A DNA stretch of 64,000 bases. It comes from Lepidodermella squamata. Lineage: Eukaryota; Animalia; Gastrotricha. The stretch covers positions 1,178,001 through 1,242,000 of the forward strand of contig JBLDXI010000024.1 in assembly GCA_047495785.1 (NCBI GenBank). Reading direction: 5' to 3'. The notes below the pieces were generated by a model. It saw only the letters and a list, made by a program, of their open reading frames with translations. It did not search any database and had not been told where the DNA came from. The position numbers and the translations under genes are program-made. Below are positions 26,301 through 47,438 of the stretch, in pieces; position 1 is the first letter of the stretch, and the number at the start of each line of letters is the position of its first letter.

Positions 26301-26908
26301 TAGCCGAGAAAATTATTATTTGCGTAAATTCGAAATTCGCAATAAGACATAACCTTTATTTCAGGAACCCTGAGAAGAGATTAATGGCAAATCTATATGA
26401 TCACACGTAACATCGTCGGATTGATTTGCTATCATTATAACTTTATCAGAAATCGAGAAAGGTATGCTTATTGCTCTGAGAGTTATCTCTTTGTCCAATA
26501 ATTTATATTAACATATGATCATTATTTATTTGCTCCAAGGAGGCTCCCTTAAAGCTATTGCTCATGGAGAAATATCAGTCGACAATTGGAGGAAATTGCC
26601 TTACATATGCGAAACGGCAGATTTATTGTTTCGTTGCCAATTATTTGGCTGAGTGGAAGTTTTTCATCCACACGTTTTTTGAGAAATGACTCAATGGTGA
26701 CTATACTTTACATCAGCTTATCACTTTTATTCCTAATATAAACCCCTTGCACTTAGGCATGAATCATCAACACGAAAAGTAAGAGAAACCAGAAGCGTGC
26801 TTGGAATATAAATCAGCTCCTTAAGTGCTGCGCTTCAAAATAATATTAAAGCTATAAAATAGTGGGTGCCAACCCTTCAGCCATATCCTGGCTCTTTCGT
26901 CGTCAGAA

Positions 26909-29642
26909 ATGAATTTCAAATTTCGATATTTGCTAGTAAACTTAATGGCTGTAGCAGTATGTGAAAGCAAGCAGATTTTACAGGTAGAAAAATGGCCAAA
27001 CTCACAATGTTTTCGTTAGTTCTGAGCAATTTATTACAGTACTCCTCGGGGCAAACCGGAAGCTTCAAAATCGGATTCATGTTACCCGGTCATCGCACCA
27101 AATACTCCGGTTCGCCAACATCATCAAGGTATGTTGTTGCCAGGAAGTCGCATTTCAGATCTTAGCATTGAGCTTTCAGTAGCAGCTCCTGTGGTGAAAT
27201 TTCGCCATCAGAGGCTCTTTTAGTGTCTCATTTCAAGCGCCTGATCCGAGATGTTGAACTGTCGCAGATACTAGGCCCAGGGGTAAAAATTGGTTTGGAG
27301 GTTCTCGACACATGCGGCTCGGAGAGCTTCGCAACTGCCCAGGCTATTCATTGGCTGAAAAAGCGGGTTAAAAGTGACAACGACTCTGCCGAGCCGCCGA
27401 TTGCCTTTGTCGTTGGGACGTCCTACAGCAGGGTGACTCAAACCATCGCCCCGCTGTTGCAACAGTTCGGCATTCCGCTTATCGATCAAGGCGCTACGGC
27501 TGATATTTTGAGTGATCAGAATCGCTTCAGGATGTTCGCTCGAGTGACAGCGTCTGACAAGTACATGGCCCAGGCTATGGTTGAATTCGTGAAAACGAAC
27601 GCATGGAACTGCGTTCATCTACTCCACAGCGTGGGTCCTTATGGCGGAGCTGGCGCTGAACAAGTCGCTCAGCAGCTCTTGAATTCGAACATTTCAATTT
27701 CGAGCGGTGGACCAATCGCGCTGCCTCTCGATCGTTCTTCGAAGGCAGATTTTGACGCGGCAGTTGCAAGAATAGCCGAGTCCGAATCAGTTCGGATCAT
27801 TATTTGCTTCTGCGAGGCGGGCACAACACTAGGGCTTCTACAAGCTATTAAAGACCGACAGGGATTGGGCAAATATTTCATCATTGGCGGGTGAGTTTCA
27901 TTAGAAATTAAAAAGATTTGCATAAGATGCATTTACATGGGCTGTTATATTGCCATGTTTAACCCTGGAAACACCTTCAGACTAGCTCATTTGAGTCTTG
28001 CAAGTATGCACCCTTTGAAATACCGACTGTATCAGTCGGGGCAACGAAAATCTCAACGTCGAAATTCTGAAAAATTCCAAAATTAAGTCGAGCAGGCTGC
28101 TATTCCGACCTTCGGCTGCGTCTCAGGTCTCCATAGCTAGCCTTCAGGCGAATATTTTCCGCTATCCGCTACAAAGCTCCCAGATATTGTATAATAACAG
28201 ATCAAAGTTTTGCAATCTACACAAAAAACTGAGTTTTTTAATTTCCGAATATCTCCTTGTAGAAAGCTGATTTTCGCAGCCCGTTTTTTCCGATTACAGT
28301 TTCTCAAGTGAAGAATCATCTGGTATTCATGTTAATGATAAATTCGGGAGGAATTATGGCTAAATATAATGTTTTTCGTTAAGCTTGAAGAAAACCAATA
28401 TTATTACAATTTCTCCTTAATGAAAAATGCGAACTTACTTTTTGTGGAGAGTTTTCTGCATGAGTTTCCTCTCTGGTTAATCTGATCTCTATGGTTAGCT
28501 GTAATCAAAACTTGTTCTTAATATTTATTTTAGTGACTTTTGGGGCAAGGAGCTGGATTTGCAAAGTCTGGAAATCATTGCCGATCACGCGATTTCGTTC
28601 AGAACAATCACGACTACGCCAAAACCTTTGACAGTTGAAATTGGAAACATCAGCGATATCAACTCATGGATAAGAGAAAGCAAAGACACGGATCCTTGGT
28701 TGAATGGTAAGAAATTTTTAATCATTGAGTACTTGGACTTGGGAGACGAAAGGCTTCGTTGAAGCATAAGGGTATATTTGCCTGTGCGAATTTTCCTTCA
28801 TTCACAGTATTCAATTATTTGAGCTTGGTTTCGAAATTCTTTGAGTTTTAGTTTCTTGTCATGGGAAATGATCTTGTTATGATCGTTGATGCTGACTGAA
28901 CTACGTTCCCTTATTCCTAGAGTGTCTGGAGACCCTGAAAAAGTGCACGTTGGATCCTACTAATACAAATTTCCATAAATGTGGTGAGTTTTGCTTTTGT
29001 TAATTATGACCTGTAAATACAAAAATTTTCTTACTCCAAGAGGAAACTGAGTTCAAAGTCACCGATCTACCCTTATCGGACTGGGTTAATTCAGTCAGCA
29101 GCGCCTTTTACGCCGGTGCTTTTGCTATGAAAGCCCTGTTTGACGAGAAATGCCGCTCAATACCAGGCGCAGACTGCCGAAAGTTCGATTCAGAAAATGA
29201 CGGTGTCAAACTGTTCCAACACATTGGGAACGCCACAATCCCATTGCAAGGTGGTGGGAGATTCAGCTTCTACCTCGGCCGGGAAGGTTTTCCGCATTAT
29301 CGCATAAATCGGTATGCAATCGAACACGGCGAAAGTGGTACCAATTACATCTACCGGCAAATCGGAACTTGGAATGTCACTAACAAGTTCGATTTCAATC
29401 CAACTTTTGACACATCGGAATATCGGGCGCCTAATGATGTCGTCTGCGCCCGGCCTTATCACAACGAATCCTGGATCCGAGCCCCCATTGTACAAGGCGC
29501 ACTTTCACCTACGATTCTGTGCGGCCAAATCCCTACGATTATCGATAAAACGATTATTATTAATAACAACAGTGTGATTCTACCGGTGGTTACCACGATA
29601 CTCTCAGTCGCGATTCTGGCTTTGATGTTTTTAACGCAGTGA
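26909..29642 (+). CDS. Venus-flytrap receptor copy 1, truncated within the TM helix with no kinase (decoy or pseudogene)
   Basis: Signal exon MNFKFRYLLVNLMAVAVCES at 26909 and the same exon series as copies 2 and 3. Homology stops at ...VAILAL (~29626) and the frame ends MFLTQ*. Confidence 0.75.
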
Positions 29643-29665
29643 ACTCTGTAAAAGAAATTATAATA

Positions 29666-30790
29666 CAGTGTGTCCGTCAAATAATATGAGCCTAAATATA
29701 GCATTTTAATTGCGCCTGTTCACGAGTCGTGCACAAGGCAAAAAAAACGCAGCACTGAATGATAGTACAGCTATTGTTGTTCATTGCTGGAATAATATCA
29801 ATTACTGCTCCGCCAACATTTGTATTATTTAATCAAGATAAAGAACGTTCTTCGGAACGAAAGCATTAGCTTCGGGATTTTTACCTGCAAGCTTTGTACA
29901 TTACTAAAGTTTTGGGGACAACGAGTTGCCCTGAATATTCATGCAATAAGATCAAACGCGCAACAATGTCAACCTAATATCTGGAAAAAAACTAACCTTT
30001 TAACTGCGATTTAATAGCAAATTTTCTGATCCAATTCAGTTAAAACTGTTTGTACTAGCCATTGGACGTATTCTTGCGGGTATGTGAAATTCCCGTATAT
30101 AACGGTTAGCCGATAGCGCCCCGGATGCTACACAAATTGGCGAAAGCGACATTACCCTTTTATTTCAAAACGCAGAACTTATTTCAAACAGATTACCAGG
30201 TCGTAATGGAAACTGCTTTAGTTGCTTTCATTGCATTTGTTGCATTTGTTGCATTTTATGCTTCAACGGCAGTTATTAAATTAGACATGCAAGATAACGA
30301 AAGAAAATTTTGAAAATATCCCGCGGCTGTTGAAGACCCAAGTCGATGGGCAAGTCGATGTACGCGAAGAAGGGGAAACCCGATTCCAAAAAAGCGGTTT
30401 GTAAAACTGGCCATGGCCGAATTCAAAATGGCCCTTGCAAAACAAAAAACTGAAACGGCTGAGGGAGAAGATGATGATGACGGAGATGAACCTGATAATT
30501 AAGATAATTTTTTAAAGGCGCGGCTCGTTAAGAGGAAAATATGAGCATTCCTGATGGTCAGAGCATCACCTTCTCTATCACCTGAAAGAATTAAGACGAA
30601 GAAAGTTTAATCATCAACACTAGCTGATGCATACAAATTTTAACTAGCAGTAGTAAATAAAGCTTTAGATTTCATTGACGTATTATTTTTTGCATCTCAT
30701 GAAAAAAATGAGACGCCAGATCTGGCGCGCGCCACGCTTGCTGTTGCTTTTGGACTATAAATAGCCTCATAATATTTGACGGACACACTG
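29666..30790. mobile_element. Non-autonomous Tc1/mariner-type DNA transposon
   Basis: TIRs cagtgtgtccgtcaaata(a)tatgag and ctcataatatttgacggacacactg flanked by TA on both sides. The empty site is visible in the paralogous sequence at ~23390. No transposase ORF. Confidence 0.85.
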
Positions 30791-31400
30791 TAGTAACTAT
30801 CGTGCACGACATTATAATTCATGACATTTAAATTTGAAAGAGTAAGTTTCAGAAGGTGATTAATAGACCCACATCCCGACGTTTTTTACCGCACCAAGTA
30901 TCTACGTAAAAAAACTGGGCATGCAATATGATGCGGTTACCTTTGACAAGCAAAATACTTTACTTTGTCCTTCTCACGAATAAATTGCTTTATTTATTAT
31001 AATGCGGAAATGATTCTCTTTTCTCTTTGCTAGTTGGAATAAATTTACGCTAGCCAGGTGAAGTTACTTGAATCTCATCGAAATGGCGAACTTGATGGGT
31101 GTAATAAATTTGGAACAATTTAACAACAAGCCGAGCGGTGGATATACGCTAATAATTTGTTATTTTGATAAGGGGTGACCTAAATATCTAAGCACGACAC
31201 GTGAATGCATAAGGACAAACTCGCGTTCAAAGTCTAAGTCGCTTATGACCTACAAAAAAGCTGTATTTAGCATTGCTAAATGCGCTGGGCGAGCTTTGGC
31301 CGAGATGATAAGGGGCACGTGAGGATGGACACATGAAATCTGAAATCTTGAAGATACGAGGGAAAAATCGCCAATACTGCCTTTTGCGACTGAAAACCCA
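30791..31400 (+). repeat. Duplicate of the intergenic region ~23390-24030 (start of a segmental duplication unit)
   Basis: tagtaactatcgtgcacgacattataattcatgacatttaaa... aligns colinearly with 23390 onward. The 29636-29665 segment matches 23363-23391. Confidence 0.9.
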
Positions 31401-32638
31401 CCTCAACTCTGCGTCATTGCCTATGCACAGACTTCATCAATTGAAATATCCATTTCGCGCTCAGGTTATATCGTTCTTTATCAGCCATTCATACTTATTT
31501 ATTGAGCCAGTTGGTTTCGAAAAAAGTCTTCATGGAGTCAGGATTCGAGCCGCATAGCACTAAAAACAATAAAAAAGATTATTCAAAAATATAATTTTGA
31601 ATACCGTAAGCTGGTCTTAATTGGAACGGAGTAATTTCGGACACTTTTGACTTTGAAATTAAATCACTCTTCAACCCGGGCGGATTTAGAGTCCGTTAAA
31701 AATGCAGAATATAGTCCTGGGTCTTGTCTTTCAAATGACACATGAAACATGAAAACAGATGTGTATGCGAGGAATGGCCCAACTTCTGTCCCGCGACCCA
31801 AAAATGCTAACTTTTCACCAAGTAGGTATTTTTTGATGGAAAGAAGCGGAAAAGATATAGCGCCATCGATTTAGTAATGCTGTTACGTTCAAACCGTTTT
31901 TAAACGAAAATTTTGATCAGTAAATGCTTGAGAAAACCCATTTTGTCCCGGCTAATTTCGGACAGCTTCAAACTACAAAGAATTAAAAATGATGCCAATG
32001 GACCTTGACAATTTTTTAAATCCCATATCCATAGATAAAGGTTACCTTTTATCTATGTTTGAAACCGTACTATTTATTCCTTCGTCGAAGATGGAAGATG
32101 TTCATGTTTTCCCGGAATCCGATGGAATAGCCCAAACCCAGGCAAGGGCTGTTTGTAGCTGAGTTCCAAGTCAATACAAAACCCTTAACTATTCATCGCT
32201 CTCACAGTGGAAATTAGAATTGAAATGGAACACAGTTAATTTGATTTTTAAATTCCTGAATTTAGTCAATTTAACCACCCTCGACGGATGAGATGGGTCG
32301 GGTAATTTTTTGAAAAGCCTCTCTTTGTTGATGGATATATTGTTTTGTTGCAAATTATTTGGCTCAGTGGAAGTTTTTCATCCACACGTTTTTTTTTTGA
32401 GAAATGACTCACATTAGCTGATGATACATTACATTAGAGTAACACTGTTATTCCTAAAATACACCCCTTGCATGCAGGTGCTTTAACAAAAGCATGAACA
32501 CGAAAAGTATACGAAAACCAGAAGCGTGCATGGATTGTAAACCATCGTCTTAACTGTCGCGCTACAGAAGAATATTGAAGCTATAAACTTGTGGGTGCCA
32601 ACCCTTCTGCTATATCCTGACTAATTTCGTAGTCAGAA

Positions 32639-35600
32639 ATGAATTTCAAATTTCGATATTTGCTAATAAATTTATTGGCTGTAGCAGTATGTGAAAGCAA
32701 GCAGATTTTACAGGTAGAACCATGGCTAAACTCTCAATGTTTTCGTTAGTACTGAGCAATTTAATACAGTACTCCTCAGGGCAAACCGGAAGCTTGAAAA
32801 TCGGATTCATGTTACCTGGTCATCGCACCAAATACTCCGGTTCGCCAACATCAGAAAGGTATGTTGTTGCCAGGAAATCACATTTAAGATCTTAGCATTG
32901 AGCTTTTCAGCAGCTGCTGCTGTGGTGAAATTTCGCCATCAGAGGCTCTTTTAGTGTCTCACTTCAAGCGCCTGATCCGAGATGTTGAATTGTCGCAGAT
33001 ATTAGGCCCAGGGGTTAAAATTGGCTTGGAGGTTCTCGACACATGTGGTGCGGAGAGCTTCGCAACTGCCCAGGCTATTCATTGGCTGAAAAAGCGGGTT
33101 AAAAGTGACAACGACTCTGCCGAGCCGCCAATCGCCTTTGTCGTTGGGACGTCCTACAGCAGGGTGACTCAAACCATCGCCCCGCTGTTGCAACAGTTCG
33201 GCATTCCGCTGATCGATTATGGCGCTACGGCTGACATTCTGAGTGATCAGAATCGCTTCAGGATGTTTACTCGAGTGACAGCGTCTGACAAGTACATGGC
33301 CCAGGCTATGGTTGAATTCGTGAAAACGAACGCATGGAACTGCGTACATCTGCTACACAGCGTGGGTCCTTATGGCGAAGCTGGCGCTGAGCAAGTCGCT
33401 CAGCAGCTTTTGAATTCGAATATTTCAATCTCGAACGATGGACCGATCGCGCTGCCTCTTGATTATTCTTCGAAGTCAGATTTTGACGCGGCAGTTGCTA
33501 GATTAGCCGAGTCTAAATCAGTTAAGATCATTATCTGCTTCTGCGAGGCGACAACAACACGAGGGCTTCTACAAGCTATTAAAGACCGACCGGGATTGAG
33601 CAAATTTGTCGTCATTGGCGGGTGAGTTTCATTTGACATCGATAAAATTAAGATTGGACACTTTGCCGTAGGGCCCCAACACGAATGTTGAGGTTGCAGC
33701 TCTAGATATCGCGAAATAAATCTCCCGAAATATCGATATTGGATTCCGCAGAATCCGACTATTTATTATCATGATTAAGGCGCACCGAAGTCCGTCGCCC
33801 AATTTTGAAACCTGCAGCGCACGCGCGCAGCGCAATTCTTAATCCCGCGCTCAATTTTAAGGTGTGCAGCGCAAATGTTTACTTTGTAACCGTAATCACA
33901 CGCGCGCAGCCGGAAATCAATATTTTGGCAGCCGAAATTTTAAACTTTGCAGCGCAATTATTTATCCACCTTAATATCAATTTTCTCTCCATAAAAGCAT
34001 TTTGAAATGATTTACATGTTTCCCGATAATGGCCCGAGCATATATGGCAGCGCTCGAGGCTGAACGAAGAAAATACCCACCCAAGCATCAAGCATCACCC
34101 AGGTTTCTGTAAATTTCGAATAGGCCGGGTCGGGGACGGAAGAAGAGACATGCGCTGAGCTTCGTGATGAGAAGCTCGTGATGAGACGCGAGACGCGCTT
34201 GCATGAAGAATAGAGGTGTTAGTGTGGTTACTCGTCCGAATCCATGACTGGCTGGGAGCCATTCATGATTAACTTCATAAATTACCGATACAAAAATATT
34301 GCTACGCGAAAATTCGAGGGCGCTGAAAATGAGGTCAATAACACGGTTACTAGTTCAGGCCATGCGGCGCCATTCGAACACCTCACAACGTATCTGCCCT
34401 ATTCGTCTCCCCTTTTATAGCCATCGGTGGCTCACGTGCAACCACTACCTAGAACCGGCCGTTGACCCTGAATCGCCGCCGCCGGTTGAAATTCCAAAAA
34501 TACAATGGAAACATATGTTCCTCCTGGTTCATCGAAAACTGCCCAGCCGCTTGTAATCGCGATAATACTTGTAAAAAGTGACTTCTCAATCGCTTTTTGA
34601 TAAATTCGGGGAATAATTTCACGTCTACACAGATATAACAGATATATCATAAATGTATTGCGCGCTAAGTAAGGTCAGTTGAAGAGCCAATCTTGCCTGT
34701 TGAGCCGATATCGATTCCAAGTATTAATTTTAGAAATCATTGATATTTTCCATATCAGCCAACATTGAGGATGTCTCTATCCGGCTGATGGTAGCAGATA
34801 GCTAAACTAAAAATCGCGGTGCCATGAAGAGCATCGATATCAATGAAAATATGGAATTTTTTTCAAATTGCAAACAATCTGAAAAATTTAATTACAACAC
34901 CCTCTCAACCCTCAAACTTAGTGCTGTATCCTCAATTTCAGTTACGCAAATATATGTTGTACGCCTATAGGGGATTTAAGCCTTTAGAGTATGAGCATTG
35001 TATTTAACCAAAATAATGGCCAAACCGTGAGGGTGACTATCGATCATCATATATCAATCGATTTTATTTAGAAGCTATGACATCCAAGAGAGGGCAGCTT
35101 GACAATGTTTGAAGGAAAAAGCAACAGATAATTTCAGGACAGGTTCAGATTTAGGACAGGAAAAGTGAACACAGTGAGACGAAACAAAGGTTTGGACCAT
35201 TCATCGTTTTAATATGTAGCAGTGATCAGTCAACAATTTGGATCAGTAGTATATAGTGTGTAAAAATAATAAAGATAATATTAAAACAAAATCTCAACAA
35301 CTTCATAAAAGGCAGTAGCAGCTCATAATAGCTTCACAACAGTAAAAAATAGAGTGCAATCAATTTATTGAAGTGCTAAACTAGAGGCATTTTTGTTGTA
35401 GAAAAAAGCGTGAGCAATTGAACGGAATATGTCAGCTGACTCGGCCTGCCGTGCCTCAATAGGCAGTTGATTCCACAGTTCGGGACCTCTGTAACTCAGA
35501 CTAAGCATTTCTCGTTTTGAGTCGCATTTCAGCTTGAACATGGGTTCGGAATTTCGAACCTCGTATCGGGGAGGCGGGTTCAGACAAAAAAGCGCTTGCA

Positions 35601-38600
35601 TTGCAGCCGGTGCTTGCTTGTTAAGGCACTTCCATATGAAGGTGGCCAGGTGGATGGCGTGTTTTTGTTCCACGTCAACCCAGCCAAGGCGATGTCGCAG
35701 TGGTTGAGCATCAGCGAGCGGATGAGCGCCACAAATAACTCGAACTGCTCGGTCTTGCGTCGATTGAAGCCTGGCCAGTGTGGTCGGGGCAGCTTGGCCC
35801 AAGGTCAGGTTACCGTAATTCAAGTGACTAAATATCAAACCATTGGCCATTAAGATAGCAGTCCTACGACTTACGAACTTCGAGGCCAGCTTGAGAACAA
35901 ACAAACCTCTTCTTGCTTTGCTTTTGGCACCATTTATGTGCTTCTTGAAAGATAGTTTATTGTCGATCGTAAAGCCAAGTGTTACCATTGCACTTGACGG
36001 CTTAACAATTGCGTCGCCGATTTTAATACAGAAATCCGGAGCCGTAGGCATCGCGCATTTCAATATCAAAAATTGCGACTTTTTACCGTTAACCTGCAAG
36101 GAGTTGGATTTCAACCAGCAACAAACCCGATTGATTTCCTGTTGAAGAACCGATCTGAGTTCGTTGACGTTCCGACTGGCGAAATAAATTGTTATATCGT
36201 CTGCGTATTGTTTGATTCCGCAGCGCGTAACGACGAGTGATAGTTCATTTACGTACACTGTAAACATAAGTGGCCCTAAAACTGAGCCCTGAGGCACACC
36301 ATGGTGAATTTCTTCAAAGGCAGATAGTGCGCTGTTAATCTTTGTAGCCTGTATTTGATTGCTGTAATTAAGGGCTATCGATTGGTGCCAAATCGAATTG
36401 CGCGCGGAAATTTTGGAAATATGATTTTTGGCCAAAATGTTGCGTTTTTTGGCCAAAACTTGACCTTGAGTGTGCCGCGTGGACTTCGATTTGGCACCAA
36501 TCGATAGCCCTTAATTACAGCAATCGATTGATATGTGATGATCGATTGTCACCCTCACGGTTTGGCCACTATGACAGTTTAAAATATTGCTTAAGCCTAT
36601 ACCGTATAAGCTTAGATCCTCTATAGGCGTACAACATATATGAACCTTCAAAATAATTAAATAATCATTCTTCAAATTAGATGAGCTGAAATAAAAACCT
36701 GTTCTTAACATTCATTTCAGTGACTTTTGGGGCACGGAGTTGGATTTGCGAAATGTGGAAATCGTTGCTGAGCGTGCCATTTCGTTCAGAACAATCACGA
36801 CTACGCCGAAGCCTTTAACAGATGAAATTGGAAATATCAGCGATATAAACTCGTGGATAAGAGAAAGCTCCTATCTCCGCAAAGACACAGATCCTTGGTT
36901 GAATGGTAAGAAGTTTCAAATGACTGAAAAGAGAGAGCCTGAACTAAAAAAGAATATAGGCTCGTTGAAGCATCCGTGTCTCCAGCTTTTTATTCAGTTT
37001 TTTTTATTTTAGTATCCACAGTATTCATTTTTTGAACTTACACAATTTTTATATTATAAGACCTGAAACTTCCTTGGGTTTTGGGTTTATGTATGGTGAA
37101 CATTGAGCTTTTCCTATTCCTAGAGTGCTTGGAGACCTTAAAAGGATGCACGTTGGATCCTACGAATATAAATTTCGATCAATGCAGTAAGTTTTGTTTG
37201 TAAATTATTCTGCGGACATTTAAATATGTATTCTTTTCAAGAGGAAACTGAGTTCAAAGACACCGATCTACCCTTATCGGACTGGGTGAATTCTGTCAGC
37301 AACGCCCTTTACGCCGGTGCTTATGCTATGAAATCCCTTTTCGATGAGAAATGCAGCTTAACACCTGGTGCTGATTGCCGAAAGTTCGATCCAGCAAATG
37401 ACGGTGTCAAACTGTTCCAACACATCAGAAACGCAACAGTCCCATTGCAAGGTGGCGCAAGATTCAGTTTCTACCGCGGCCGAGAAGGTTTCCCGCTTTA
37501 TCGCATCAATCGCTATTCAATCGAACGCGGCGGTGGTAGTACGAATTACATCTACCGCCAAATCGGAACTTGGGATGTCAATAATAAGTTCAAATGGACA
37601 GCCGACACATCGGAATATCGGGCACCTAATGATGTCGTCTGCGCCCGGCCTTACAGCAACGAGACCTGGATCCGAGCCCCCATTGTTCAGGGCGCACTTT
37701 CGCCAACGATTCTGTGCGGTAGTCAAGGCTACGGCACTACGATTATCCATGAACCGCAGATTACTATCAACAACAACAACAACAACAATGTAATCCTACC
37801 GGTGGTTACAACGATACTCTCAGTCGCCATTCTAGCTTTGATCATCGCTGTGGTGATAATTTACCTGAAATTTCAGCGGGAACCTGACCAGAAACTAGAT
37901 GACCAGACAGCCTTGGAAATTTCGCGTTTTACTCAGTATCATTTCGGAAATTGCCCTGGACTGACAATGGACGAAAAAGTAGAATTACGAGACGTTTTGC
38001 AGACCTATTACATTCCAAACGATAGGCTATCAATTTCAACCGAAGCCCTAGGCGAAGGCCATAAAGGTGTCGTCTACAAAGGTAAGATGAATGTCAACGG
38101 GGTGTGGCAAGACGTAGCAGCAAAGCAACTAAAAGGCGGCAGCTCGATGGAAACTGCCAAATTTCTGCGAGAAGGTAGTGTTATGCGCGGCTTCGACCAC
38201 CCTAATGTGCTGAAGCTACTCGGCATCAACATTTTGGCGAACAATGCCGCTCAGATTATAGTGCCGTATATTCCTAATGGAAATTTGCGCGATTTTCTCG
38301 CGACTTACGGTCATTCGTTTATGGAGAGTGAAAAAATCAATCTGTGCCTCCAAATTTGCACGGCGATGGAGTACATTGCGGCGAAACAGTGTGTTCATCG
38401 CGATCTGGCGTGTCGCAATATTCTTGTCGAATCGCGGACCTACATCAATATTGTTTTTCTTGCTGATTTCGGCCTGTCCAAGCAGCTCAATGAAAGTGAT
38501 TACGTGAGGCCAAGCGCGGAAGGAGCTCCTCTGCCGCTCCGCTGGTGCCCACCTGAAGCCTTAATAGGTGGTGCATACGATGAGAAGAGTGACGTATGGA

Positions 38601-39048
38601 GTTTCGGCGTTGTTTGCTGGGAAATTTTTAGCAACGGCGACAAACCGTATCCCGGACTGAGGAATGATGAAGTTTTCAGCCGTGTCATGACACACCCTGG
38701 GGGCTATCCCGATTTGCCGGCAACTTCTCCGCAAGATTTGTAAGTTTAACTGACGCTCAACAGAGTTAGCGCACCTAATTTTTTGCTGTACTATATTTTA
38801 GCTACGATGCAATCATGAAGATATGTTGGTTCAGAGATAAGGCACGAAGGCCAACTTTCAGCGAACTCCGCGAGCGAATACAACAATTTCAGAAGTGTCG
38901 TAATTCTCCAATGAGTTCCGCCTCTTCTGGATTTCCCAGATACTCCCGGCAAGCGAGTCAAAATTCTTCGCATTTAGCCGCCAGCTGCTCTCGGCAAGCG
39001 AGTCTTAATTCGTCGCAATTAGCAGAAGAACACGGTGTGTTGGTGTGA
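32639..39048 (+). CDS. Venus-flytrap (mGluR-type) receptor tyrosine kinase, copy 2 (VKR-like architecture)
   Basis: Signal peptide and class-C-GPCR-type flytrap (LDTC, VVGTSYS, YGAT, LSDQNRFRMF, TASD, GPYGEAG, CFCE). Single TM VILPVVTTILSVAILALIIAVVIIYL, then a tyrosine kinase (GEGHKG, VAAK, HRDLACRN, DFG, LPLRW, SDVWSFGV). Last intron ~38741-38802. Confidence 0.88.
34950..36642. mobile_element. Foldback MITE (~390 bp when reconstructed) split by a LINE insertion
   Basis: 34950-35063 is the reverse complement of 36523-36642, and 36357-36396 is the reverse complement of 36485-36525. Confidence 0.75.
35064..36356 (-). mobile_element. 5'-truncated non-LTR retrotransposon (CR1/L2/Jockey-group RT C-terminal half)
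   Basis: GVPQGSVLGP, YADD, a LGFTIDNKL thumb motif and PELWNQLP. Flanked by a duplicated GATT. Confidence 0.85.
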
Positions 39049-39399
39049 CATTCCTATCATTCTTAATTTTTCCAGCGATTCTCGCTATCCCTTGTTATCT
39101 TTTATTTTATTATTTACTGCATGTATGCTTGAAGGTTTCTTAAATATTATCTGAGTCATCTTGTAATTTCTTGTTTATCAGCTTCACTGAAAATAGCTAG
39201 TAAAAAACGTGTCAGTATTACTTGAAGCTGAGCCCGTGACGTCAATTGAAAATGGTTAACGCCTACCTAACATGAGGAGAATAAGGATGTGGCATAGCCT
39301 CACGCTTCACAGGGAAAAGGTGCAGCGGCCGGTAAATGATAATGCATTTCCGCTGGTAAACACTCAATGAACTTTTATTGTCAGTAAAAAACTAAACAA

Positions 39400-39791
39400 T
39401 TAGCCTTTATTTCGAGCCAGAAGAGAGATAGCAGACGCCGTACCTGAAACTTGGAGGTTAGAAGAAGGCTATACCAGAGAAATTACCAGAACAACCTGAG
39501 CTTGTATCAGATCTCCTTCTCTTGCCGAATTTTTAGTCTCGCCATAACATGTTATCGAGCACATTAAACCGCTGATGACGTCTTCGCTCGGTCTAGGCAG
39601 ACAACCTGAAAAAACGTGATGATTGAAGCGAACGGGGATCGATAGACGCAAAAGTGCAATATCGCTATTGAACTTCCGGTTGAACTTATCTCCGTATTCG
39701 GGGTGAATTGTTATCGATGCGACTTTCAGTGGGCCGACTTCAGTCTCCTCGCATAAAGAACGGCGAGTTTTCCCGAGGTAAATGCTCCAAT
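39400..39791 (-). pseudogene. Duplicated, internally deleted 3' fragment of the 47439-50940 protease gene
   Basis: Matches 47439-47479 joined directly to 47840-48190. The exons carrying GDSGGP are deleted and there is no 5' half. Confidence 0.85.
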
Positions 39792-40879
39792 TTAGAATTC
39801 ACGGAAAGCCCATTTTAATTATAATAAGTTGTGATATCATCGAGGTCACGTTGTAGCGCGAGACAATCATTAAGAGAGTGAATCACCTTGTATAATTTTG
39901 TATCATCGGCAAAATATTTAACTATAGCGCTATAGTAAGGACGTCGTTAGAAAATGCCTTTCGTACCGGGCCGAGATCACCCATGCTCGCCAGGCTGACG
40001 AAGCCGAGGCTCGTACTATCAGCGCGCTCCGCCCGGGTCTGTCACACGCTGCGGCTTCTGCTGCCCTGCCCGCTGCTACGGGGGCCACCCCGCCTCCGCC
40101 CGTCCCGGCTCGTCCGCTCGCTCATGCGCACCCACCTGTTGTCGCTGCTGGTTCCGTTCCGCCCGCTCACGCTGCCCTGGTCGTCCCCGCCGGTCGAGTT
40201 CCGCCGCCGCCGCCGCAGCCCTCGCCGTCCGCCGACCTTCTGCCGCCGACCCGAGCTGCCCGCCATGGAGGCCGCCATGTCTGCCTTGAACCAGTTCTTC
40301 CCCCGTCACAGCTGCCTAGCTGCGGGGGCGCCTAGCGCCCGGTCCTGCGTCCTCACCACGACCCGACGTCTCGGCCTTTCCAGGTAACTGTACCCTGTTC
40401 TCCCCACCCGCTTTTCCTTGTGCTCCCTTTTTGCCACAGGATGTTCCTGGCCCCTGGCGCCCTGCCGTTCTGAGTTCCTATTGGACCACGGGTGGCTGCC
40501 CGTGTGCAGCAGTTCCCGTCTCTCCAGTCCCCAGTATCCTGCGCCGCCTAGCTGATCAACCCGCCGTCGCCGCTAGACTGTAACTTTTGTCTGTGCATCA
40601 CTGTGTCGCTGTGTTCCACTATGACTATCATCTGGCTGTCTTTTTCCCTAATTTTTCTTTTACCATTATATAGATATAACATTGTACGTGTGTGCTGTTA
40701 AATGTTTCACTAGATAACTCACTGTAATGTCCCGCCGGTTTAACCTACGGGTTGCGGCGCTGTGTATTTTTGCTTTTCGATCAATAAATCATTCCAATGA
40801 AGTAAAAATAATAAAATAAAATAAATAAAATAAATAAAAATAAAAATAATAAAAATTCGTGGCTGGAATTTTCAAAATC

Positions 40880-41581
40880 TTATTTATTTATTTATTTATT
40901 TATTTATTGAGCATAATCCCATAGTTGAGAGCTCGACGTGGAAAAGGTGCATTTCTAAAATGTTTCGTGCAGAGAATCGAAGTCAGTTCAGGCCAGGTCA
41001 TCAGTCAAAACAAAATAGGACATTAAATCAACAAATAGACAAAATAATCAACAATTTAAAAGATGTTTATATACAAGTTGTCGGCAGTCGTTGGCGGTTG
41101 AGCAGGCTTTCATGCCGCATTTACAATCAGGCAAAGTGCCGTCGTATTCGAGAATGCCAATAGGTTTGTGCTGTGTGCAGTGAAAGTAGATGGGCAGAGA
41201 GTTGAACAAAGCCGGTCCTCGGTAGCTGAGACGAGCTTTGCCGTAGTCGATTCGAGCTTTAGGAAGCTCGAAGGTGAGGTGAGCGTTGCGCAGTTGTCGA
41301 GCGGGTTGTTTCCTGGTAAACAAGTTGCAGATAGCATCCGGGGCTTCACCTATTATGCTCCTGAACATTAAAGTTGCCAGGTGTACGTCGCGTTTGCCGT
41401 CCAAGTCCAACCATCCGAGCTCTTTGCGTAATGGCGCCACGGGAGCGTCCATGGACGCATTCATGATGATTCTGACAGCTCGGTCTTGTAGCTTCTGCAT
41501 TCGTTCGAGTGAAGTTTTGCAGGCCTCGCCGAGCAATATGTCGCAGTAGTGGAGGTGAGAGAAGACAAGGCCATTAGCCAT
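40880..41581 (-). mobile_element. 3' fragment of a non-LTR retrotransposon with an (AATA)n tail
   Basis: MANGLVFSHLHYC...LQDRAVRII...LGWL...LSYRGPALFNSLP is homologous to the 35365 element. A tattta repeat tail lies at ~40880-40908. Confidence 0.8.
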
Positions 41582-41719
41582 CTTCTATCTTCTGAAAACT
41601 CAAGAAAAAGTGAAAAATTGGCGTTTTCCAGCCTTCAGTCTCCTGCATCTCCGAAAAACCGAGGATGGTAATTGTATTTTTTCATACAATTAAATGAAAT
41701 AGAGGGCTGCTCTAAGGGC

Positions 41720-42400
41720 TGCTCTACACGGCTGGTCGAAAGCGCCGAAAGTCTAACCACGGGAATCGCAAGGGGACGTAAGTCAAATTTCACAAAAAGG
41801 GTCGTAATAAAGCCGTTTTTGGTGAAAACGGGTCAACTTTGGGACCCTACCTCTAGGAATCCCGAGGATGGATTTTTGATTTCTTGATATCGTTAGATAG
41901 CCCAATCTTTGTTCTACTAATCTGGTTGGTGGCACCGTAAGTCTTTCCACGGGATTCGTAAGGAGACGAAAGTCAAATGTTACAAAAAACGTCGTAGAGT
42001 GGCCGTTTTTTTTCGCTGAAATCGGGTCAACTTGGCGACCCTCTCTCTTGAAAACCCGTGGATGGAATTTTGATTTATTGGCATCGTTAGATAGCCTGAT
42101 AGCTACTCTACAAGGTTGGTTGTAAGCGCCGAAAGTCTATCCACGGGAATTGCGAGTGGACAACTTGACGACGTTTCTTCTCCCGTAAACCCGTTGATAA
42201 ATTTTTGATTTCTTGATATCCTTAGATAGCCCAAGATGAGATCCACAAGGCTGGTCCAAAGCGCCGAAATCGTGAAATCGTGTCAACTGTACGAGCCTCT
42301 TTTTTGAAAACGCGTGGATGGAGTTTTTATTGCTTGGCCTCGTTAGATAGGCTAAAAGCCAATCTACTAGTCTTGTTGAAAGTCTATCCGTGGGATTGCT
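41720..42400. repeat. Degenerate tandem repeat, ~4 units of ~140-190 bp
   Basis: Recurring gcgccgaaagtcta.ccacggga...ggatgga...tttgattt...cgttagatagcc blocks. Confidence 0.7.
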
Positions 42401-43217
42401 TTCTTTAGAGTGCTATAGAGTGCTATAGACTTAGATTTTATGAGATCTTCCTCGAACCTTCGCTTCAGTTTAGCGAAAAGATGATCATGAAGACAAGCAG
42501 CGACTTTAAATCTACCATACTCGCTATTTTTGTAACCGGATTTTTTGTAGTTATTGAACTTGCGCTGTTTACGGTTATAGAGCCGTCGTAGCTCCACAGT
42601 TTCCCATGGCACTCTGCGAGGTGATTTGAAAACATTTTCATCGGAATAAAGGATTTAATACCGGAATAAAAAACCGAGATGAGGAAGGAACAACACAGCT
42701 CCACCTTAGGCAAACCTTCAATGAGTGGAGGAGCGAAAATGTCAACTTTCGCTCCTCCACTCATGAGCGCCGCGCGCTGTTGAAAGGCCTCGGAGTGCCT
42801 CATAGAGAGATAAAGGATTAAGTGACAATTTCATTTTAGGTGACAGTTTACAGATTTAAGTGACGCAATTATGACGTGGAAATTATGGCGCCTTATACTA
42901 TATGCGAAACGACAAATTTATTGTTTCGTTGCCAATTATTTGGCTGAGTGGAAATTTTCATCCACACGTTTTTTGAAAAATGACTCACTCATGGTCACTA
43001 TACGCTACATCAGCGTATCACTGTTATTCCTAAAATATACCCCTTGCATGCGGGTGCTTGAACATATGAATCATGAACACGAAAAGTAAGAGCAATCAGA
43101 AGCGTGCTTGGAATGTAAACCAGCTCCTTAACTGCTGGATCCTTCAATTAATATTCAAGCTATAAAATAGTGGGTGCCAACCCTTCTGCCATATCCTGAC
43201 TAATTTCGTAGTCAGAA

Positions 43218-46200
43218 ATGAATTTCAAATTTCGATATTTGCTAATAAATTTATTGGCTGTAGCAGTATGTGAAAGCAAGCAGATTTTACAGGTAGAACC
43301 ATGGCTAAACTCACAATGTTTTCGTTAGTTCTGAGCAATTTATTACAGTACTTCTCAGGGCAAACCGGAAGCTTGAAAATCGGATTTATGTTACCTGGTC
43401 ATCGCACCAAATACTCCGGTTCTCCAACATCATCAAGGTATGTTGTTGCCAGGAAGTCGCATTTCAGATCTTAGCATTGAGCTTTCAGTAGCAGCTCCTG
43501 TGGTGAAATTTCGCCATCAGAGGCTCTTTTAGTGTCTCACTTCAAGCGCCTGATCCGAGATGTTGAATTGTCGCAGATATTAGGCACAGGGGTTAAAATT
43601 GGCTTGGAGGTTCTCGACACATGCGGCTCGGAGAGCTTCGCAACTGCCCAGGCTATTCATTGGCTGAATAAGCGGGTTAAAAATGACAACGACTCTGCCG
43701 AGCCGCCGATTGCCTTTGTCGTTGGGACGTCCTACAGCAGGGTGACTCAAACCATCGCCCCGCTGTTGCAACAGTTCGGCATTCCGCTGATCGATTACGG
43801 CGCTACGGCTGACATTTTGAGTGATCAGAATCGCTTCAGGATGTTTACTCGAGTGACAGCGTCTGACAAGTACATGGCCCAGGCTATGGTTGAATTCGTG
43901 AAAACGAACGCATGGAACTGCGTACATCTGCTACACAGCGTGGGTCCTTATGGCGAAGCTGGCGCTGAACAAGTCGCTCAGCAGCTCTTGAATTCGAACA
44001 TTTCAATTTCGAGCGGTGGACCAATCGCGCTGCCTCTCGATCGTTCTTCGAAGACAGATTTTGACGCGGCAGTTGCAAGAATAGCCGAGTCTGAATCAGT
44101 TCGGATCATTATTTGCTTCTGCGAGGCGGGCACAACACTAGGGCTTCTACAAGCTATTAAAGACAGGCAGGGATTGGGCAAATTTTTCATCATTGGCGGG
44201 TGAGTTTCATTAGAAATTAAAAAGATTTGCAAAATATGCATTTACATGGGCTGTTATATTGCCATGTTTAACCCTGGAAACACCTTCAGACTAGCTCATT
44301 TGAGTCTTGCAAGTATGCACCCTTTGAAATACCGACTGTATCAGTCGGGGCAACGAAAATCTCAACGTCGAAATTCTGAAAAATTTCAAAATTAAGTCGA
44401 GCAGGCTGCTATTCCGACCTTCGGCTGCGTCTCAGGTCTCCATAGCTGGCCTTCAGGCGAATATTTTCCGCTATCCGCTACAAAGCTCCCAGATATTGTA
44501 TAATAACAGATCTTAGTTTTGCACCTACACAAAAAACTTAGTTCTTTTAATTTCCGAATATCTCCTTGTAAGAAGCTGATTTTCGCAGCCCGTTTTTTCC
44601 GAGTACAGTTTCTCAAGCGAAGAATCATCTGGTATTCATGTTAATGATAAATTCGGGAGGGATTATGGCTAAATATAATGTTTTTCGTTAAGCTTGAAGA
44701 AAACCAATATTATTACAATTTCTCCTTAATGAAAAATGCGAACTTACTTTTTGTGGAGAGTTTTCTGCATGAGTTTCCTCTCTGGTTAATCTGATCTCTA
44801 TGGTTAGCTGTAATCAAAACTTGTTCTTAATATTTATTTTAGTGACTTTTGGGGCAAGGAGCTGGATTTGCAAAGTCTGGAAATCATTGCCGATCACGCG
44901 ATTTCGTTCAGAACAATCACGACTACGCCAAAACCTTTGACAGCTGAAATTGGAAACATCAGCGATATCAACTCATGGATAAGAGAAAGCAAAGACACGG
45001 ATCCTTGGTTGAATGGTAAGAAATTTTTAATCATTGAGTACTTGGACTTAGGAGACGAAAGGCTTCGTTGAAGCATAAGGGTATATTTGCCTGTGCGAAT
45101 TTTCCTTCATTCACAGTATTCAATTATTTGAGCTTGGTTTCGAAATTCTTTGAGTTTTAGTTTCTTGTCATGGGAAATGATCTTGTTATGATCGTTGATG
45201 CTGACTGAACTACGTTCCCTTATTCCTAGAGTGTCTGGAGACCCTGAAAAAATGCACGTTGGATCCTACTAATACAAATTTCCATAAATGTGGTGAGTTT
45301 TGCTTTTGTTAATTATGACCTGTAAATACAAAAATTTTCTTACTCCAAGAGGAAACTGAGTTCAAAGTCACCGATCTACCCTTATCGGACTGGGTTAATT
45401 CAGTCAGCAGCGCCTTTTACGCCGGTGCTTTTGCTATGAAATCCCTTTTCGATGAGAAATGCCGCTCAATACCAGGCGCAGACTGCCGAAAGTTCGATTC
45501 AGAAAATGACGGTGTCAAACTGTTCCAACACATTGGGAACGCCACAATCCCATTGCAAGGTGGTGGGAGATTCAGCTTCTACCTCGGCCGGGAAGGTTTT
45601 CCGCATTATCGCATAAATCGGTATGCAATCGAACACGGCGAAAGTGGTACCAATTACATCTACCGGCAAATCGGAACTTGGAATGTCACTAAAAAGTTCG
45701 ATTTCAATCCAACTTTTGACACATCGGAATATCGGGCGCCTAATGATGTTGTCTGCGCCCGGCCTTATCACAACGAATCCTGGATCCGAGCCCCCATTGT
45801 ACAGGGCGCACTTTCATCTACGATTCTAATTCCTACAATTATCGATAAACCGGAGATTATTGTTAACAATAACAACAGCGTGATTCTACCGGTGGTGACC
45901 ACGATACTCTCAGTCGCCATTCTTGCTTTGATCATCGCTGTGGTGATAATTTACCTGAAATTCCAACGGGAACCACCTGACCACAAACAGGACAAGACAG
46001 CCTCGGAGGTTTTGCGTTTTACTGAATATCATTTCGGAAATTGTCCTGGTCTGAAAATGGACGACAAAGCAGAATTACGAGACGTCTTACAGGCCTACTT
46101 CATACCAAACGATCAGCTATCAATTTCAAACGAAATCCTAGGTGAAGGCCATAAAGGTGTGGTCTATAAAGGTCAGATGAATGTCAACGGGGTGTGGCAA

Positions 46201-47094
46201 GACGTAGCCGCAAAGCAACTAAAAGGCGGCAGCTCGATGGAAACTGTCAAATTTCTGCGCGAAGGCAGTGTCATGCGCGGCTTTGACCACCCTAATGTGT
46301 TGAAGCTACTCGGCATTAACATTTTGGCGAACAGTGCCGCTCAGATTATAGTGCCGTATATTCCTAATGGAAATTTGCGCGATTATCTCGCGACTTACGG
46401 TCATTCGTTCGTGGAGAGTGAAAAAATCAATCTATGCCTCCAAATTTGTGCTGCTATGGAATACATTGCGGAGAAACAGTGTGTTCATCGCGATCTGGCG
46501 TGTCGCAATATTCTTGTCGAATCGCGGTACTACATCAATATCGTTTTTCTTGCTGATTTCGGCCTGTCCAAGCAGCTCAATGAAAGTGATTACGTGAGGC
46601 CAAGCGCGGAAAGAGCTCCTCTGCCGATCCGCTGGTGCCCACCTGAAGCCTTAATAGGTGGTGCATACGATGAGAAGAGTGACGTATGGAGTTTCGGCGT
46701 TGTTTGTTGGGAAATTTTCAGCAACGGCAAAAAACCGTATCCAGGACTTAAGAATGATGATGTTTTAAGTCTTGTTATGACACACCCTGGGGGCTATCCT
46801 GATTTGCCGGAAAGTTGTCCTCAAGATTTGTAAGTTTAACTTGACGCTCAACAGAGTTAGCGTACCTAATTTTTTGCTGTACTATATTTTAGCTACGATG
46901 CAATCATGAAGATATGTTGGTTCAGAGATAAGACACGAAGGCCAACTTTTAAGGAACTGCGCGAGCGATTACAACAATTTCAGAAGTGTCGTAATTCTCC
47001 TATGAGTTCCGCCTCTTCTGGATTTCCCAGATACTCCCTGCAAGTGAGTCGAAATTCTTCGCATTTAGCCGAAGAAAACGGTGTGCTGGTGTGA
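43218..47094 (+). CDS. Venus-flytrap (mGluR-type) receptor tyrosine kinase, copy 3
   Basis: Same 7-exon layout and motifs as copy 2, with an intact kinase (HRDLACRN, DFG, LPIRW). Ends in ENGVLV. Confidence 0.88.
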
Positions 47095-47438
47095 CAATCC
47101 TAATTCCTAATTTATGTATCACCTTTATCATGTATTATTTTATTATTTACTGCATGTATCCCCCAAATGTTCTTTATTCTTATTTGAGTCAACTTTGTAT
47201 ATTCGGGTTTATCCTTAATATAACTGCTTCACTGAAAATAGCTAGTAAAAAACGTGTCAAGATTATGATGCATTACTGGAACTCTGACGTCACCTAACGA
47301 TGGTTGACGCCCATGTTACATAAGGATGTAACATAGCGTCACGCTTCACGGGAGAAAGTGCTACGGCCGCTTAATTCATACTGCATTTCCGCTGATAAAT
47401 ACTCAAGAAACTTTTATTTTCAATAAAAAACTAAACAA

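What the first reader, a model, noticed from the sequence alone, without database searches (positions are those of the whole stretch)
26909..47094. Tandem family of receptor tyrosine kinases with a metabotropic-glutamate-receptor-type Venus flytrap ectodomain
Seen: signal peptide, flytrap, short stalk, one TM and an intact tyrosine kinase. The end of the flytrap, the TM and the kinase share a single exon, so the fusion is not a gene-model artefact. There is no nine-cysteine domain and no 7TM. Established: Venus kinase receptors (flytrap + InR-like kinase) exist in invertebrates. Here the flytrap follows mGluR motifs closely (LDTC, LSDxxRFxxFxR, YGE.G, CFCE), and the activation loop has a single Tyr (ESDYVR) rather than the InR-type YxxxYY. 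Inference: possibly an independent class-C-GPCR/RTK domain fusion that has recently expanded.
Basis: partly seen in the sequence, partly recalled or inferred. Interest (0 to 1): 0.9.

Follow-up and report, generated by a model that had tools for sequence, protein, structure and literature searches.

The report
Flytrap receptor kinases unrelated to VKRs
An unidentified invertebrate carries a transcribed tandem cluster of single-pass receptors that join a glutamate-receptor-type "Venus flytrap" sensor to a tyrosine kinase. Both halves come from different branches than the known Venus kinase receptors, so the same design seems to have arisen twice.

Summary
The window has three tandem + strand copies. 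Copies 2 (955 aa) and 3 (930 aa) are intact: signal peptide, flytrap, short stalk, one TM and a tyrosine kinase, in 7 exons. One exon carries the flytrap end, the TM and most of the kinase. Spliced contigs of a probable RNA run confirm all six introns of copy 3. Copy 1 is cut inside the TM, just before a 1.13-kb inverted-repeat transposon, and has no kinase.

The flytrap scores best against mGluRs (99-117 bits) and groups with this genome's NCD3G-bearing mGluR-type receptors. Canonical VKR flytraps score best against GABA-B (159 bits) and lie across a 100/100 split (AU p = 9e-6). The kinase sits in a lineage-specific clade with AXL. VKR kinases group with ROS-like and MuSK kinases (AU p = 0.0034). 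The genome shows no canonical VKR.

The single activation-loop Tyr is derived: relatives have YY. The residues that bind the alpha-amino-acid backbone are kept; the glutamate-specific ones are not.

The scan noted the same family before on other DNA of this genome (s1-393971, s1-374233, s1-374043, s1-407533).

Verdict: a new variant of a known kind, of moderate interest. Limits: the VKRs sampled are all arthropod, and no biochemistry was done.

The parts
43218..47094 (+). Copy 3 (c3): intact 7-exon gene, 930 aa. Exons: 43218-43292, 43349-43437, 43489-44199, 44843-45015, 45230-45292, 45350-46829, 46893-47094.
   Evidence: Model with GT..AG at all junctions. All six introns are seen as joints in X2 contigs. 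Pfam finds ANF_receptor and PK_Tyr_Ser-Thr.
45350..46829 (+). Fusion exon of c3: last part of the flytrap, a stalk of about 45 aa with one Cys, the TM helix, the juxtamembrane segment and the kinase up to subdomain X.
   Evidence: One open frame of 504 aa. Pfam places the kinase at residues 232-465 of the ORF and finds no NCD3G or 7tm_3.
43489..44199 (+). Main flytrap exon of c3, from CGEI to IIGG. It carries the equivalents of mGluR1 S165, T188, D208, Y236 and E292.
   Evidence: Best PDB hits are mGluR7/8/4/1 at 92-99 bits. Residues mapped.
45230..45292 (+). 63-nt mini-exon of c3 encoding ECLETLKKCTLDPTNTNFHKC, the Cys-bearing loop of lobe 2.
   Evidence: Joints 45014>45229 and 45291>45349 in X2 contig record 12. 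The equivalents at 28921-28983 (c1) and 37124-37186 (c2) have AG/GT borders.
32639..39048 (+). Copy 2 (c2): intact 7-exon gene, 955 aa. Exons: 32639-32713, 32770-32858, 32911-33621, 36721-36905, 37124-37186, 37242-38739, 38802-39048.
   Evidence: 87.8% aa identity to c3; dN/dS 0.29-0.30. Loose ends of X2 contigs carry c2-specific sequence at the exon 6/7 junction.
35365..36456 (-). Reverse-transcriptase ORF of a retroelement (probably non-LTR; no Pfam scan run) inside intron 3 of c2. That intron is 3.1 kb, against 643 nt in c3.
   Evidence: 363-aa ORF whose translation looks like a reverse transcriptase, judged by eye. Gap in the c2/c3 DNA alignment.
26909..29642 (+). Copy 1 (c1): flytrap-only, tail-less copy, 570 aa. 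Exons: 26909-26983, 27040-27128, 27180-27890, 28534-28706, 28921-28983, 29041-29642. It ends ...VAILALMFLTQ* inside the TM.
   Evidence: DNA homology to c3 ends at 29626. Ectodomain dN/dS against c3 is 0.20.
29660..30793 (.). 1.13-kb dispersed element with terminal inverted repeats of about 40 bp (at least 20 copies at 91-98% identity). It lies 34 nt past the point where c1 stops resembling c3. No kinase sequence follows it.
   Evidence: Own-genome DNA search. No c3 match between 29627 and 32334.

Best explanation
The window holds a tandem cluster of a receptor tyrosine kinase family whose outer part is a Venus flytrap of the mGluR/CaSR branch of class C receptors, without the nine-cysteine domain or the 7TM. 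Its inner part is a catalytically complete tyrosine kinase from a lineage-specific clade that lies near AXL/MET-type kinases.

The overall design is that of a Venus kinase receptor. But neither domain descends from the VKR domains, which are a GABA-B-type flytrap and an insulin-receptor/ROS-type kinase. So this is a separate fusion: convergent architecture, not a divergent VKR.

Likely working (inferred, not shown): an L-alpha-amino acid or a close derivative, not glutamate, binds between the two lobes. Closure of the flytrap reorients a receptor dimer, and the kinases phosphorylate each other on the activation-loop tyrosine and then signal.

Copies 2 and 3 are working genes. Copy 1 lost its kinase through a transposon-associated break. 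It would encode a membrane-anchored or secreted flytrap that is either a decaying remnant or a kinase-less partner or decoy.
For: Shown:
- Domains and intact frames.
- Spliced transcripts.
- One exon, and in the relatives one ORF, spans flytrap-TM-kinase.
- Purifying selection, dN/dS 0.20-0.30.
- All catalytic motifs are present: GEGHKGVV, VAAK, HRDLACRN, DFG, PPE.

Flytrap origin:
- Reciprocal PDB scores.
- Tree with PDB-labelled anchors: the own mGluR1/5 orthologue scores 237 bits to mGluR1, and an own GABA-B-like receptor was labelled the same way.
- AU p = 9e-6.
- The VKR motif GY(V/I)WFLPxWL (PMC3703292) is replaced by FIIGGDFWGKEL.

Kinase origin:
- PDB: ROS and MET 159 bits, InsR 145 bits, and Schistosoma VKR2 not among the 60 best. 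A true VKR kinase gives VKR2 270 bits and InsR 258 bits.
- Tree and AU p = 0.0034.
- The same kinase clade also carries CUB ectodomains, which points to domain shuffling.

No canonical VKR flytrap beside a kinase was found in this genome.

Ligand class: the equivalents of mGluR1 S165, T188, D208, Y236, E292 and D318 are kept, while K409 is W and R323 is E.
Against: - The canonical VKRs available were all arthropod. Schistosoma, Nematostella, mollusc, annelid and echinoderm VKRs were not in the trees.
- No named InsR, MET, mGluR or GABA-B sequences could be put in the trees. Anchors were this genome's own genes, labelled by their best PDB hits.
- The kinase tree is a quick search, and deep tyrosine-kinase branches are weak.
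- The window copies have one activation-loop Tyr and Ala at the VA(A)K x position, so their activity is unproven.
- Ligand, dimerisation and autophosphorylation are inferred from VKRs and mGluRs.
- Run X2 is only guessed to be RNA, and near-identical paralogues (c1 and c3 are 96% alike) cannot be told apart in its contigs.
Confidence: 0.75

Rival explanations
1. They are fast-evolving paralogues of canonical VKRs. There was one ancient flytrap-kinase fusion, and this lineage diverged beyond recognition.
For: The overall architecture is identical, including the absence of a Cys-rich domain. The kinase is divergent from every solved kinase (best 159 bits), so long-branch effects are possible. 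Relatives keep the YY loop of VKRs.
Against: The flytrap scores 99-117 bits against mGluRs, but only about 40 bits over 81 residues against a VKR flytrap. Divergence alone would not create specific similarity to another branch. A 100/100 split and AU p = 9e-6 separate the flytraps. AU p = 0.0034 for the kinase. The VKR flytrap motif is absent.
Confidence: 0.07
2. The genes are real, but the kinase is not a signalling enzyme. The receptors would act as pseudokinase scaffolds or ligand sinks, like the kinase-homology domain of flytrap guanylyl cyclases.
For: The window copies have a single activation-loop Tyr and VAAK instead of VAVK. Paralogue A has HCD for HRD. The atlas feature search lists guanylyl-cyclase-like clusters.
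Against: The Gly loop, the Lys, the HRD Asp, the Asn, DFG and PPE are all present in c2 and c3. The intracellular part has dN/dS 0.29. No cyclase domain follows: the stop is at 47094 and the next gene is on the other strand.
Confidence: 0.1
3. A gene-model artefact: a secreted flytrap gene and a separate kinase gene are read as one.
For: This genome has stand-alone flytrap genes (earlier scan notes), and copy 1 is effectively one.
Against: One open exon contains the flytrap end, the TM and the kinase. X2 contig record 12 runs from the main flytrap exon through the two small flytrap exons into the first 185 bases of the fusion exon. P0003 and P0405 are single ORFs of 863 and 890 aa with both domains.
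Confidence: 0.02

Closest known systems
Venus kinase receptors (VKR; SmVKR1/2, AmVKR, AaVKR; PMC2680970, PMC3703292)
   Same: Signal peptide, one Venus flytrap, no Cys-rich domain, one TM and an intracellular tyrosine kinase. The Ser that binds the alpha-carboxylate (mGluR1 S165) is kept. Probably amino-acid gated.
   Different: The VKR flytrap is of GABA-B type (159 bits to GABA-B1) and the VKR kinase is of insulin-receptor type (258 bits to InsR). Here the flytrap is of mGluR type and the kinase lies in a lineage-specific clade near AXL. The motif GY(V/I)WFLPxWL is absent. W stands where VKRs have Tyr at the mGluR1 K409 position. The window copies have a single loop Tyr.
Metabotropic glutamate / CaSR-type class C GPCRs
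   Same: The flytrap belongs to this branch: it is sister, at 97/95 support, to the genome's NCD3G-bearing receptors. It has the CGE, LDTC, LSD..RF, YGE.G, CFCE and GxDxWG motifs and the five backbone-binding residues.
   Different: No NCD3G and no 7TM. K409 and R323, which hold the glutamate side chain, are W and E. Only 99-117 bits to mGluRs, whereas the genome's true mGluR1/5 orthologue gives 237 bits.
AXL/TYRO3/MER and MET/RON receptor kinases
   Same: They are among the best structural and sequence neighbours of the kinase. AXL falls in the same 96% clade.
   Different: No Ig/FN3 or Sema/PSI/TIG ectodomain. Identity is only about 35%. Orthology is not shown, and MET itself was not in the tree.
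Choanoflagellate UTK12 (Monosiga) and RTKS (Salpingoeca)
   Same: PMC3703292 reports that they have a VKR-like flytrap-kinase architecture.
   Different: Not compared here, because no sequences were at hand. The mGluR-type ANF+NCD3G lineage is reported as metazoan-only (PMC12716839), so a shared origin is unlikely but untested.

Membership tests
Venus kinase receptor (VKR) | Architecture: signal peptide, one VFT, one TM and a tyrosine kinase, with no Cys-rich domain and no 7TM | tested here: met
Venus kinase receptor (VKR) | VFT monophyletic with VKR VFTs and close to GABA-B receptors (PMC2680970) | tested here: not met
   PDB reciprocal scores. 100/100 split in the tree. AU p = 9e-6.
Venus kinase receptor (VKR) | VFT motif GY(V/I)WFLPxWL, and Tyr at the mGluR1 K409 position (PMC3703292) | tested here: not met
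   The window has FIIGGDFWGKEL, and W at the K409 column.
Venus kinase receptor (VKR) | Kinase monophyletic with VKR kinases and close to the insulin receptor | tested here: not met
   AU p = 0.0034. The VKR sample was arthropod only.
Venus kinase receptor (VKR) | Two adjacent Tyr (YY) in the activation loop | tested here: not met
   ESDYVR in c2 and c3. The relatives C, P0405, P0002 and P0263 have DYY or EYY.
Venus kinase receptor (VKR) | Kinase activated by L-arginine or other amino acids | not testable with these tools
   Needs a recombinant receptor assay.
mGluR/CaSR/T1R-type class C GPCR | [quoted passage not shown] | tested here: met
mGluR/CaSR/T1R-type class C GPCR | NCD3G nine-cysteine domain and 7tm_3 heptahelical domain | tested here: not met
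   No hit in the fusion exon or anywhere in the window.
Receptor guanylyl cyclase (ANF_receptor + kinase-homology + cyclase) | C-terminal guanylate cyclase domain and a degenerate kinase-homology domain | tested here: not met
   The protein ends about 60 aa after the kinase. The catalytic motifs are intact.
AXL/MET-type RTKs | Orthology of the kinase together with an Ig/FN3 or Sema ectodomain | tested here: inconclusive
   AXL is in the same 96% clade, but MET and RON were not in the tree. The ectodomain is a VFT.

The most novel reading that the evidence does not exclude
Animals invented the amino-acid-gated flytrap receptor tyrosine kinase at least twice, from different class C sensor lineages and different kinase lineages. 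In this lineage the module diversified into a family with kinase-bearing and kinase-less members. The kinase-less members, such as copy 1 and the stand-alone flytraps elsewhere in the genome, may work together as receptor and decoy or partner.
Probability: 0.3. Interest if true: 0.7.

Novelty: new variant of a known kind. Interest (0 to 1): 0.55.

Why it matters
VKRs are treated as a single, monophyletic invention and as the only flytrap receptor kinases of animals. A second, independent fusion would be a clean case of convergent receptor design. It uses an mGluR-type sensor and a kinase from a different branch.

It would also give a natural comparison for how flytrap closure is coupled to a single-pass kinase rather than to a 7TM domain. 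And it would point to an unexplored class of small-molecule-sensing RTKs.

An exhaustive search of 1.84 billion representative proteins found this flytrap-kinase combination in only a handful of metagenomic proteins. The family is therefore essentially undescribed.

Tried and rejected
- The search for homologous proteins with full-length P0003 returned only noise. The word filter was swamped and not even mGluRs appeared, so it says nothing.
- Complex prediction on two copies of the P0405 flytrap gave 'no answer' (score 0.01). This is not evidence either way. The chain also lacks its first 50 or so residues.
Anchors were instead taken from loci delivered by the genome search.
- My first gene model started at ATG 43301 and lacked the mini-exon. 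The X2 joints corrected it.
- The choanoflagellate proteins listed as close relatives of P0003 proved to be cytoplasmic SH2 proteins with two kinase domains. Their scores are sums over both domains, so they are not relatives of special interest.
- The top PDB hit 9p9u ('EGFR', two stretches) is also a two-kinase chain and was ignored.
- The label 'IR-like' that I gave to own-genome kinase C15:1918k was wrong. It is ROS-like (258 bits).
- The organism could not be identified.
Full report
**What is in the sequence.**

A self-comparison shows three + strand repeats:
- 26602-29626 is 95.7% identical to 42896-45932.
- 32335-39360 matches 42916-47399 at 74-92%, with a large gap.
- The third repeat is the reference, 42896-47400.

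Pfam finds ANF_receptor in the 711-nt exon of each copy. It finds PK_Tyr_Ser-Thr in the long exon of copies 2 and 3 only.

**Gene models.**

My first model had five exons and started at ATG 43301. Laying two public runs on 43201-47200 corrected it. Run X2 is probably RNA. Its contigs carry GT..AG joints at 43293-43348, 43438-43488, 44200-44842, 45016-45229, 45293-45349 and 46830-46892. The DNA run X1 shows none of these.

The gene therefore has seven exons. The model includes a 63-nt mini-exon (45230-45292) that encodes a Cys-bearing loop.

Transferring the borders to the other copies gives intact frames with canonical splice sites everywhere: c3 930 aa, c2 955 aa, c1 570 aa.

One exon (45350-46829 in c3) encodes the end of the flytrap, a stalk of about 45 residues with a single Cys, a 26-residue hydrophobic helix and the kinase up to subdomain X. 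That excludes a gene-model artefact. In addition, the relatives P0003 and P0405 carry flytrap, TM and kinase in one uninterrupted ORF on metagenomic contigs.

**Copy 1 is not a kinase.**

Its similarity to c3 ends at 29626, in the middle of the TM, and a stop follows at 29640-29642. From about 29660 runs a 1.13-kb element with terminal inverted repeats of about 40 bp, present in at least 20 copies at 91-98% identity. No kinase sequence lies between it and copy 2.

The c1 ectodomain has dN/dS 0.20 against c3. Divergence between c1 and c3 is patchy: about 10% at the 5' end, about 3% in the main flytrap exon and under 1% over 44200-45700. This suggests gene conversion.

In copy 2, intron 3 is swollen to 3.1 kb and holds a reverse-transcriptase ORF of a retroelement on the minus strand at 35365-36456.

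For c2 against c3, dN/dS is 0.30 in the ectodomain and 0.29 in the TM plus cytoplasmic part, with dS about 0.22. Both halves are under purifying selection.

**Kinase features.**

The catalytic motifs are complete in c2 and c3: GEGHKGVV, VAAK, HRDLACRN, DFG and RWCPPE.

However, it is restricted to the four closest paralogues: c2, c3 and two genes 30-40 kb upstream. The next relatives have DYY or EYY: the minus-strand paralogue at C24:1162k, P0405, P0002 and P0263. The single Tyr is therefore a recent loss, not a family trait.

**Is it a VKR? The published definition.**

VKRs form monophyletic groups for both domains. Their flytrap is close to GABA-B receptors and their kinase is close to insulin receptors (PMC2680970). 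They have a YY loop, a conserved flytrap motif GY(V/I)WFLPxWL and a Tyr at the mGluR1 K409 position (PMC3703292).

I obtained canonical VKRs by searching with P0022, an arthropod flytrap-kinase protein. The hits include the Drosophila willistoni protein and proteins of beetle, termite, sandfly, copepod, barnacle, shrimp, spider and tick.

**Flytrap.**

- The main flytrap exon of c3 scores 92-99 bits against mGluR7/8/4/1, 68 bits against T1R3 and 56 bits against CaSR. No GABA-B chain is among the 60 best.
- The P0003 flytrap gives mGluR4 117 bits and CaSR 60 bits.
- A canonical VKR flytrap (P0138) gives GABA-B1 159 bits, GABA-B2 133 bits and mGluR only about 36 bits.
- Compared directly, the P0003 and P0138 flytraps share one 81-residue alignment of 40 bits.

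For a tree I used this genome's own class C receptors as anchors:
- Only four genes have an NCD3G domain. One of them is a clear mGluR1/5 orthologue, at 237 bits to mGluR1.
- The very many intronless 7tm_3 genes lack NCD3G. One tested example matches GABA-B receptors best.

The careful tree of 37 rows has a 100/100 branch of length 1.63 between two groups:
- nine VKRs plus four GABA-B-like receptors;
- everything else.

On the second side, the window family (100/99) lies in a 100/99 clade with the genome's other flytrap-kinase genes, some flytrap-only genes, P0405 and P0263. That clade is sister (97/95) to the NCD3G receptors.

Holding all kinase-linked flytraps together costs 127 log-likelihood units, AU p = 9e-6.

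**Kinase.**

- The c3 kinase scores ROS and MET about 159 bits, Eph 148 bits and InsR 145 bits. The solved Schistosoma VKR2 kinase (7zvs) is not among the 60 best.
- The P0138 kinase scores VKR2 270 bits and InsR/IGF1R 258 bits.

The quick tree has 92 rows:
- The eleven VKRs form a 100% clade inside a 95% clade. That clade also holds MuSK-type kinases and this genome's ROS-like kinase, labelled by 258 bits to ROS.
- The window kinases lie inside a 100% clade of 23 rows made almost entirely of this genome's own kinases. That clade sits in a 96% clade with AXL.
- The 23-row clade also contains kinases attached to CUB domains (own C15:2500k and P0008). The kinase module has therefore been shuffled onto different sensors.

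Holding the window family and the VKRs together costs 59.9 lnL, AU p = 0.0034.

Rows left out of the kinase tree: proteins longer than 1300 aa or with several kinase domains, and own-genome kinases whose domain is split or broken (C16:53k, C31:955k, C7:736k).

**Absence of a canonical VKR in this genome.**

A search with P0022 finds only kinase matches, of which the best is the ROS-like gene. A search with the VKR flytrap finds at best a GABA-B-like GPCR at 74 bits, and nothing beside a kinase.

**Distribution.**

Within the genome, the closest paralogues are two genes at C24:1136-1147k (83-89% identity) and one on the minus strand at C24:1162-1165k (43-49%). More distant flytrap-kinase genes lie at C16:49-54k, C24:5.17-5.20 Mb and C31:954-957k.

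An exhaustive HMMER pass over 1.84 billion representative proteins returned, among its 150 best, only P0003/P0405, P0002, P0263 and the fragment P0304 with this flytrap or this flytrap-kinase pair. All are from ENA metagenome assemblies. No canonical VKR reached the list.

The best matches of P0405 in this genome are exactly the C24 cluster: 37-39% over the fusion exon and 44-46% over the flytrap exon. A neighbouring peptidase gene on the same contig is at most 53% identical. The family is therefore conserved in a distant relative.

**How it probably works.**

The numbering was anchored through the alignment of the own mGluR1/5 orthologue to chain 1ewk. In that alignment S164/S165, S186, T188, D208, Y236, E292, G293, D318, R323 and K409 all fall on the expected letters.

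All window copies keep S165, T188, D208, Y236, E292 and D318. These are the residues that hold the alpha-carboxylate and alpha-amino groups. K409 is W and R323 is E; in mGluR1 those two residues hold the distal carboxylate of glutamate.

By analogy with mGluRs and VKRs, the ligand is probably an L-amino acid or derivative other than glutamate. Signalling would then run through flytrap closure, dimer rearrangement and trans-autophosphorylation. This step is inference: no ligand, dimer or activity was tested.

**Literature.**

Searches found no description of an mGluR-type flytrap tyrosine kinase. PMC3703292 mentions VKR-like architectures in two choanoflagellates, which I could not compare. PMC12716839 reports the ANF+NCD3G mGluR-type architecture as metazoan-only, which fits a fusion within animals.

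**Earlier notes of this scan.**

The scan described the same kind of gene at other places of this genome. One follow-up reached a similar view: a private MET/AXL-like kinase branch on swapped sensors.

**Verdict.**

The local expansion is recent, but the family is old. It is a new variant of a known kind of receptor.

Noticed in passing
window 29660-30793: A 1.13-kb non-coding element with terminal inverted repeats of about 40 bp. At least 20 copies at 91-98% identity are spread over many contigs, so it looks like a recently active non-autonomous DNA transposon. A second repeat of about 430 bp lies at about 31600-32030.
   Followed up: partly
window 43293-43348 (also 26984-27039 and 32714-32769): Intron 1 contains an in-frame ATG (43301). 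If the intron is retained, this ATG would give a second, different signal peptide (MAKLTMFSLVLSNLLQYFSGQ) on the same mature protein. It is conserved in all three copies.
   Followed up: no
window 42896-45932 against 26602-29626: Divergence between copies 1 and 3 is patchy: about 10% at the 5' flank, about 3% in the main flytrap exon and under 1% over 44200-45700, introns included. This suggests gene conversion between the copies.
   Followed up: partly
window 51269-53830 (+): A cytoplasmic tyrosine kinase gene that looks like ACK/TNK2: a SAM-like N-terminus, a kinase split over two exons and an SH3-like stretch. It is unrelated to the flytrap family.
   Followed up: no
window 47868-49079 (-) and 49281-50771 (-): A trypsin-like serine protease gene (IVGG...LTAAHC), and beside it a 496-aa Gly/Asn/Pro-rich low-complexity ORF.
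   Followed up: no
window 39983-41581: Between copies 2 and 3 lie a Pro/Arg-rich 134-aa ORF (+) and a 177-aa ORF (-) that resembles the C-terminal part of the reverse-transcriptase ORF at 35365-36456. These look like retroelement debris.
   Followed up: no
whole genome G000: At least 139 7tm_3 and 112 ANF_receptor matches, both lower bounds. Most lie in intronless ORFs of about 800 aa without NCD3G. Only four genes have the nine-cysteine domain. This is a very large expansion of GABA-B-like class C receptors in a 121-Mb genome.
   Followed up: partly
L039 (G000:C24:1137765-1139255), paralogue A: The catalytic-loop motif reads HCDLACRN instead of HRDLACRN in an otherwise intact close paralogue.
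   Followed up: no
own-genome kinase loci L003, L006, L008, L009, L011, L026 and others: Many kinases of the lineage-specific clade end their kinase exon at the same point as the window genes, after ...CPQD and before F/YxxxMxxCW. A shared intron position fits a common origin of the kinase module.
   Followed up: no
proteins P0260, P0262, P0264, P0278 and others: Public predicted proteins of 1,800-3,900 aa with 4-12 mGluR-type flytrap repeats and no kinase. They are either fused predictions of tandem flytrap-only genes or true multi-flytrap proteins.
   Followed up: no
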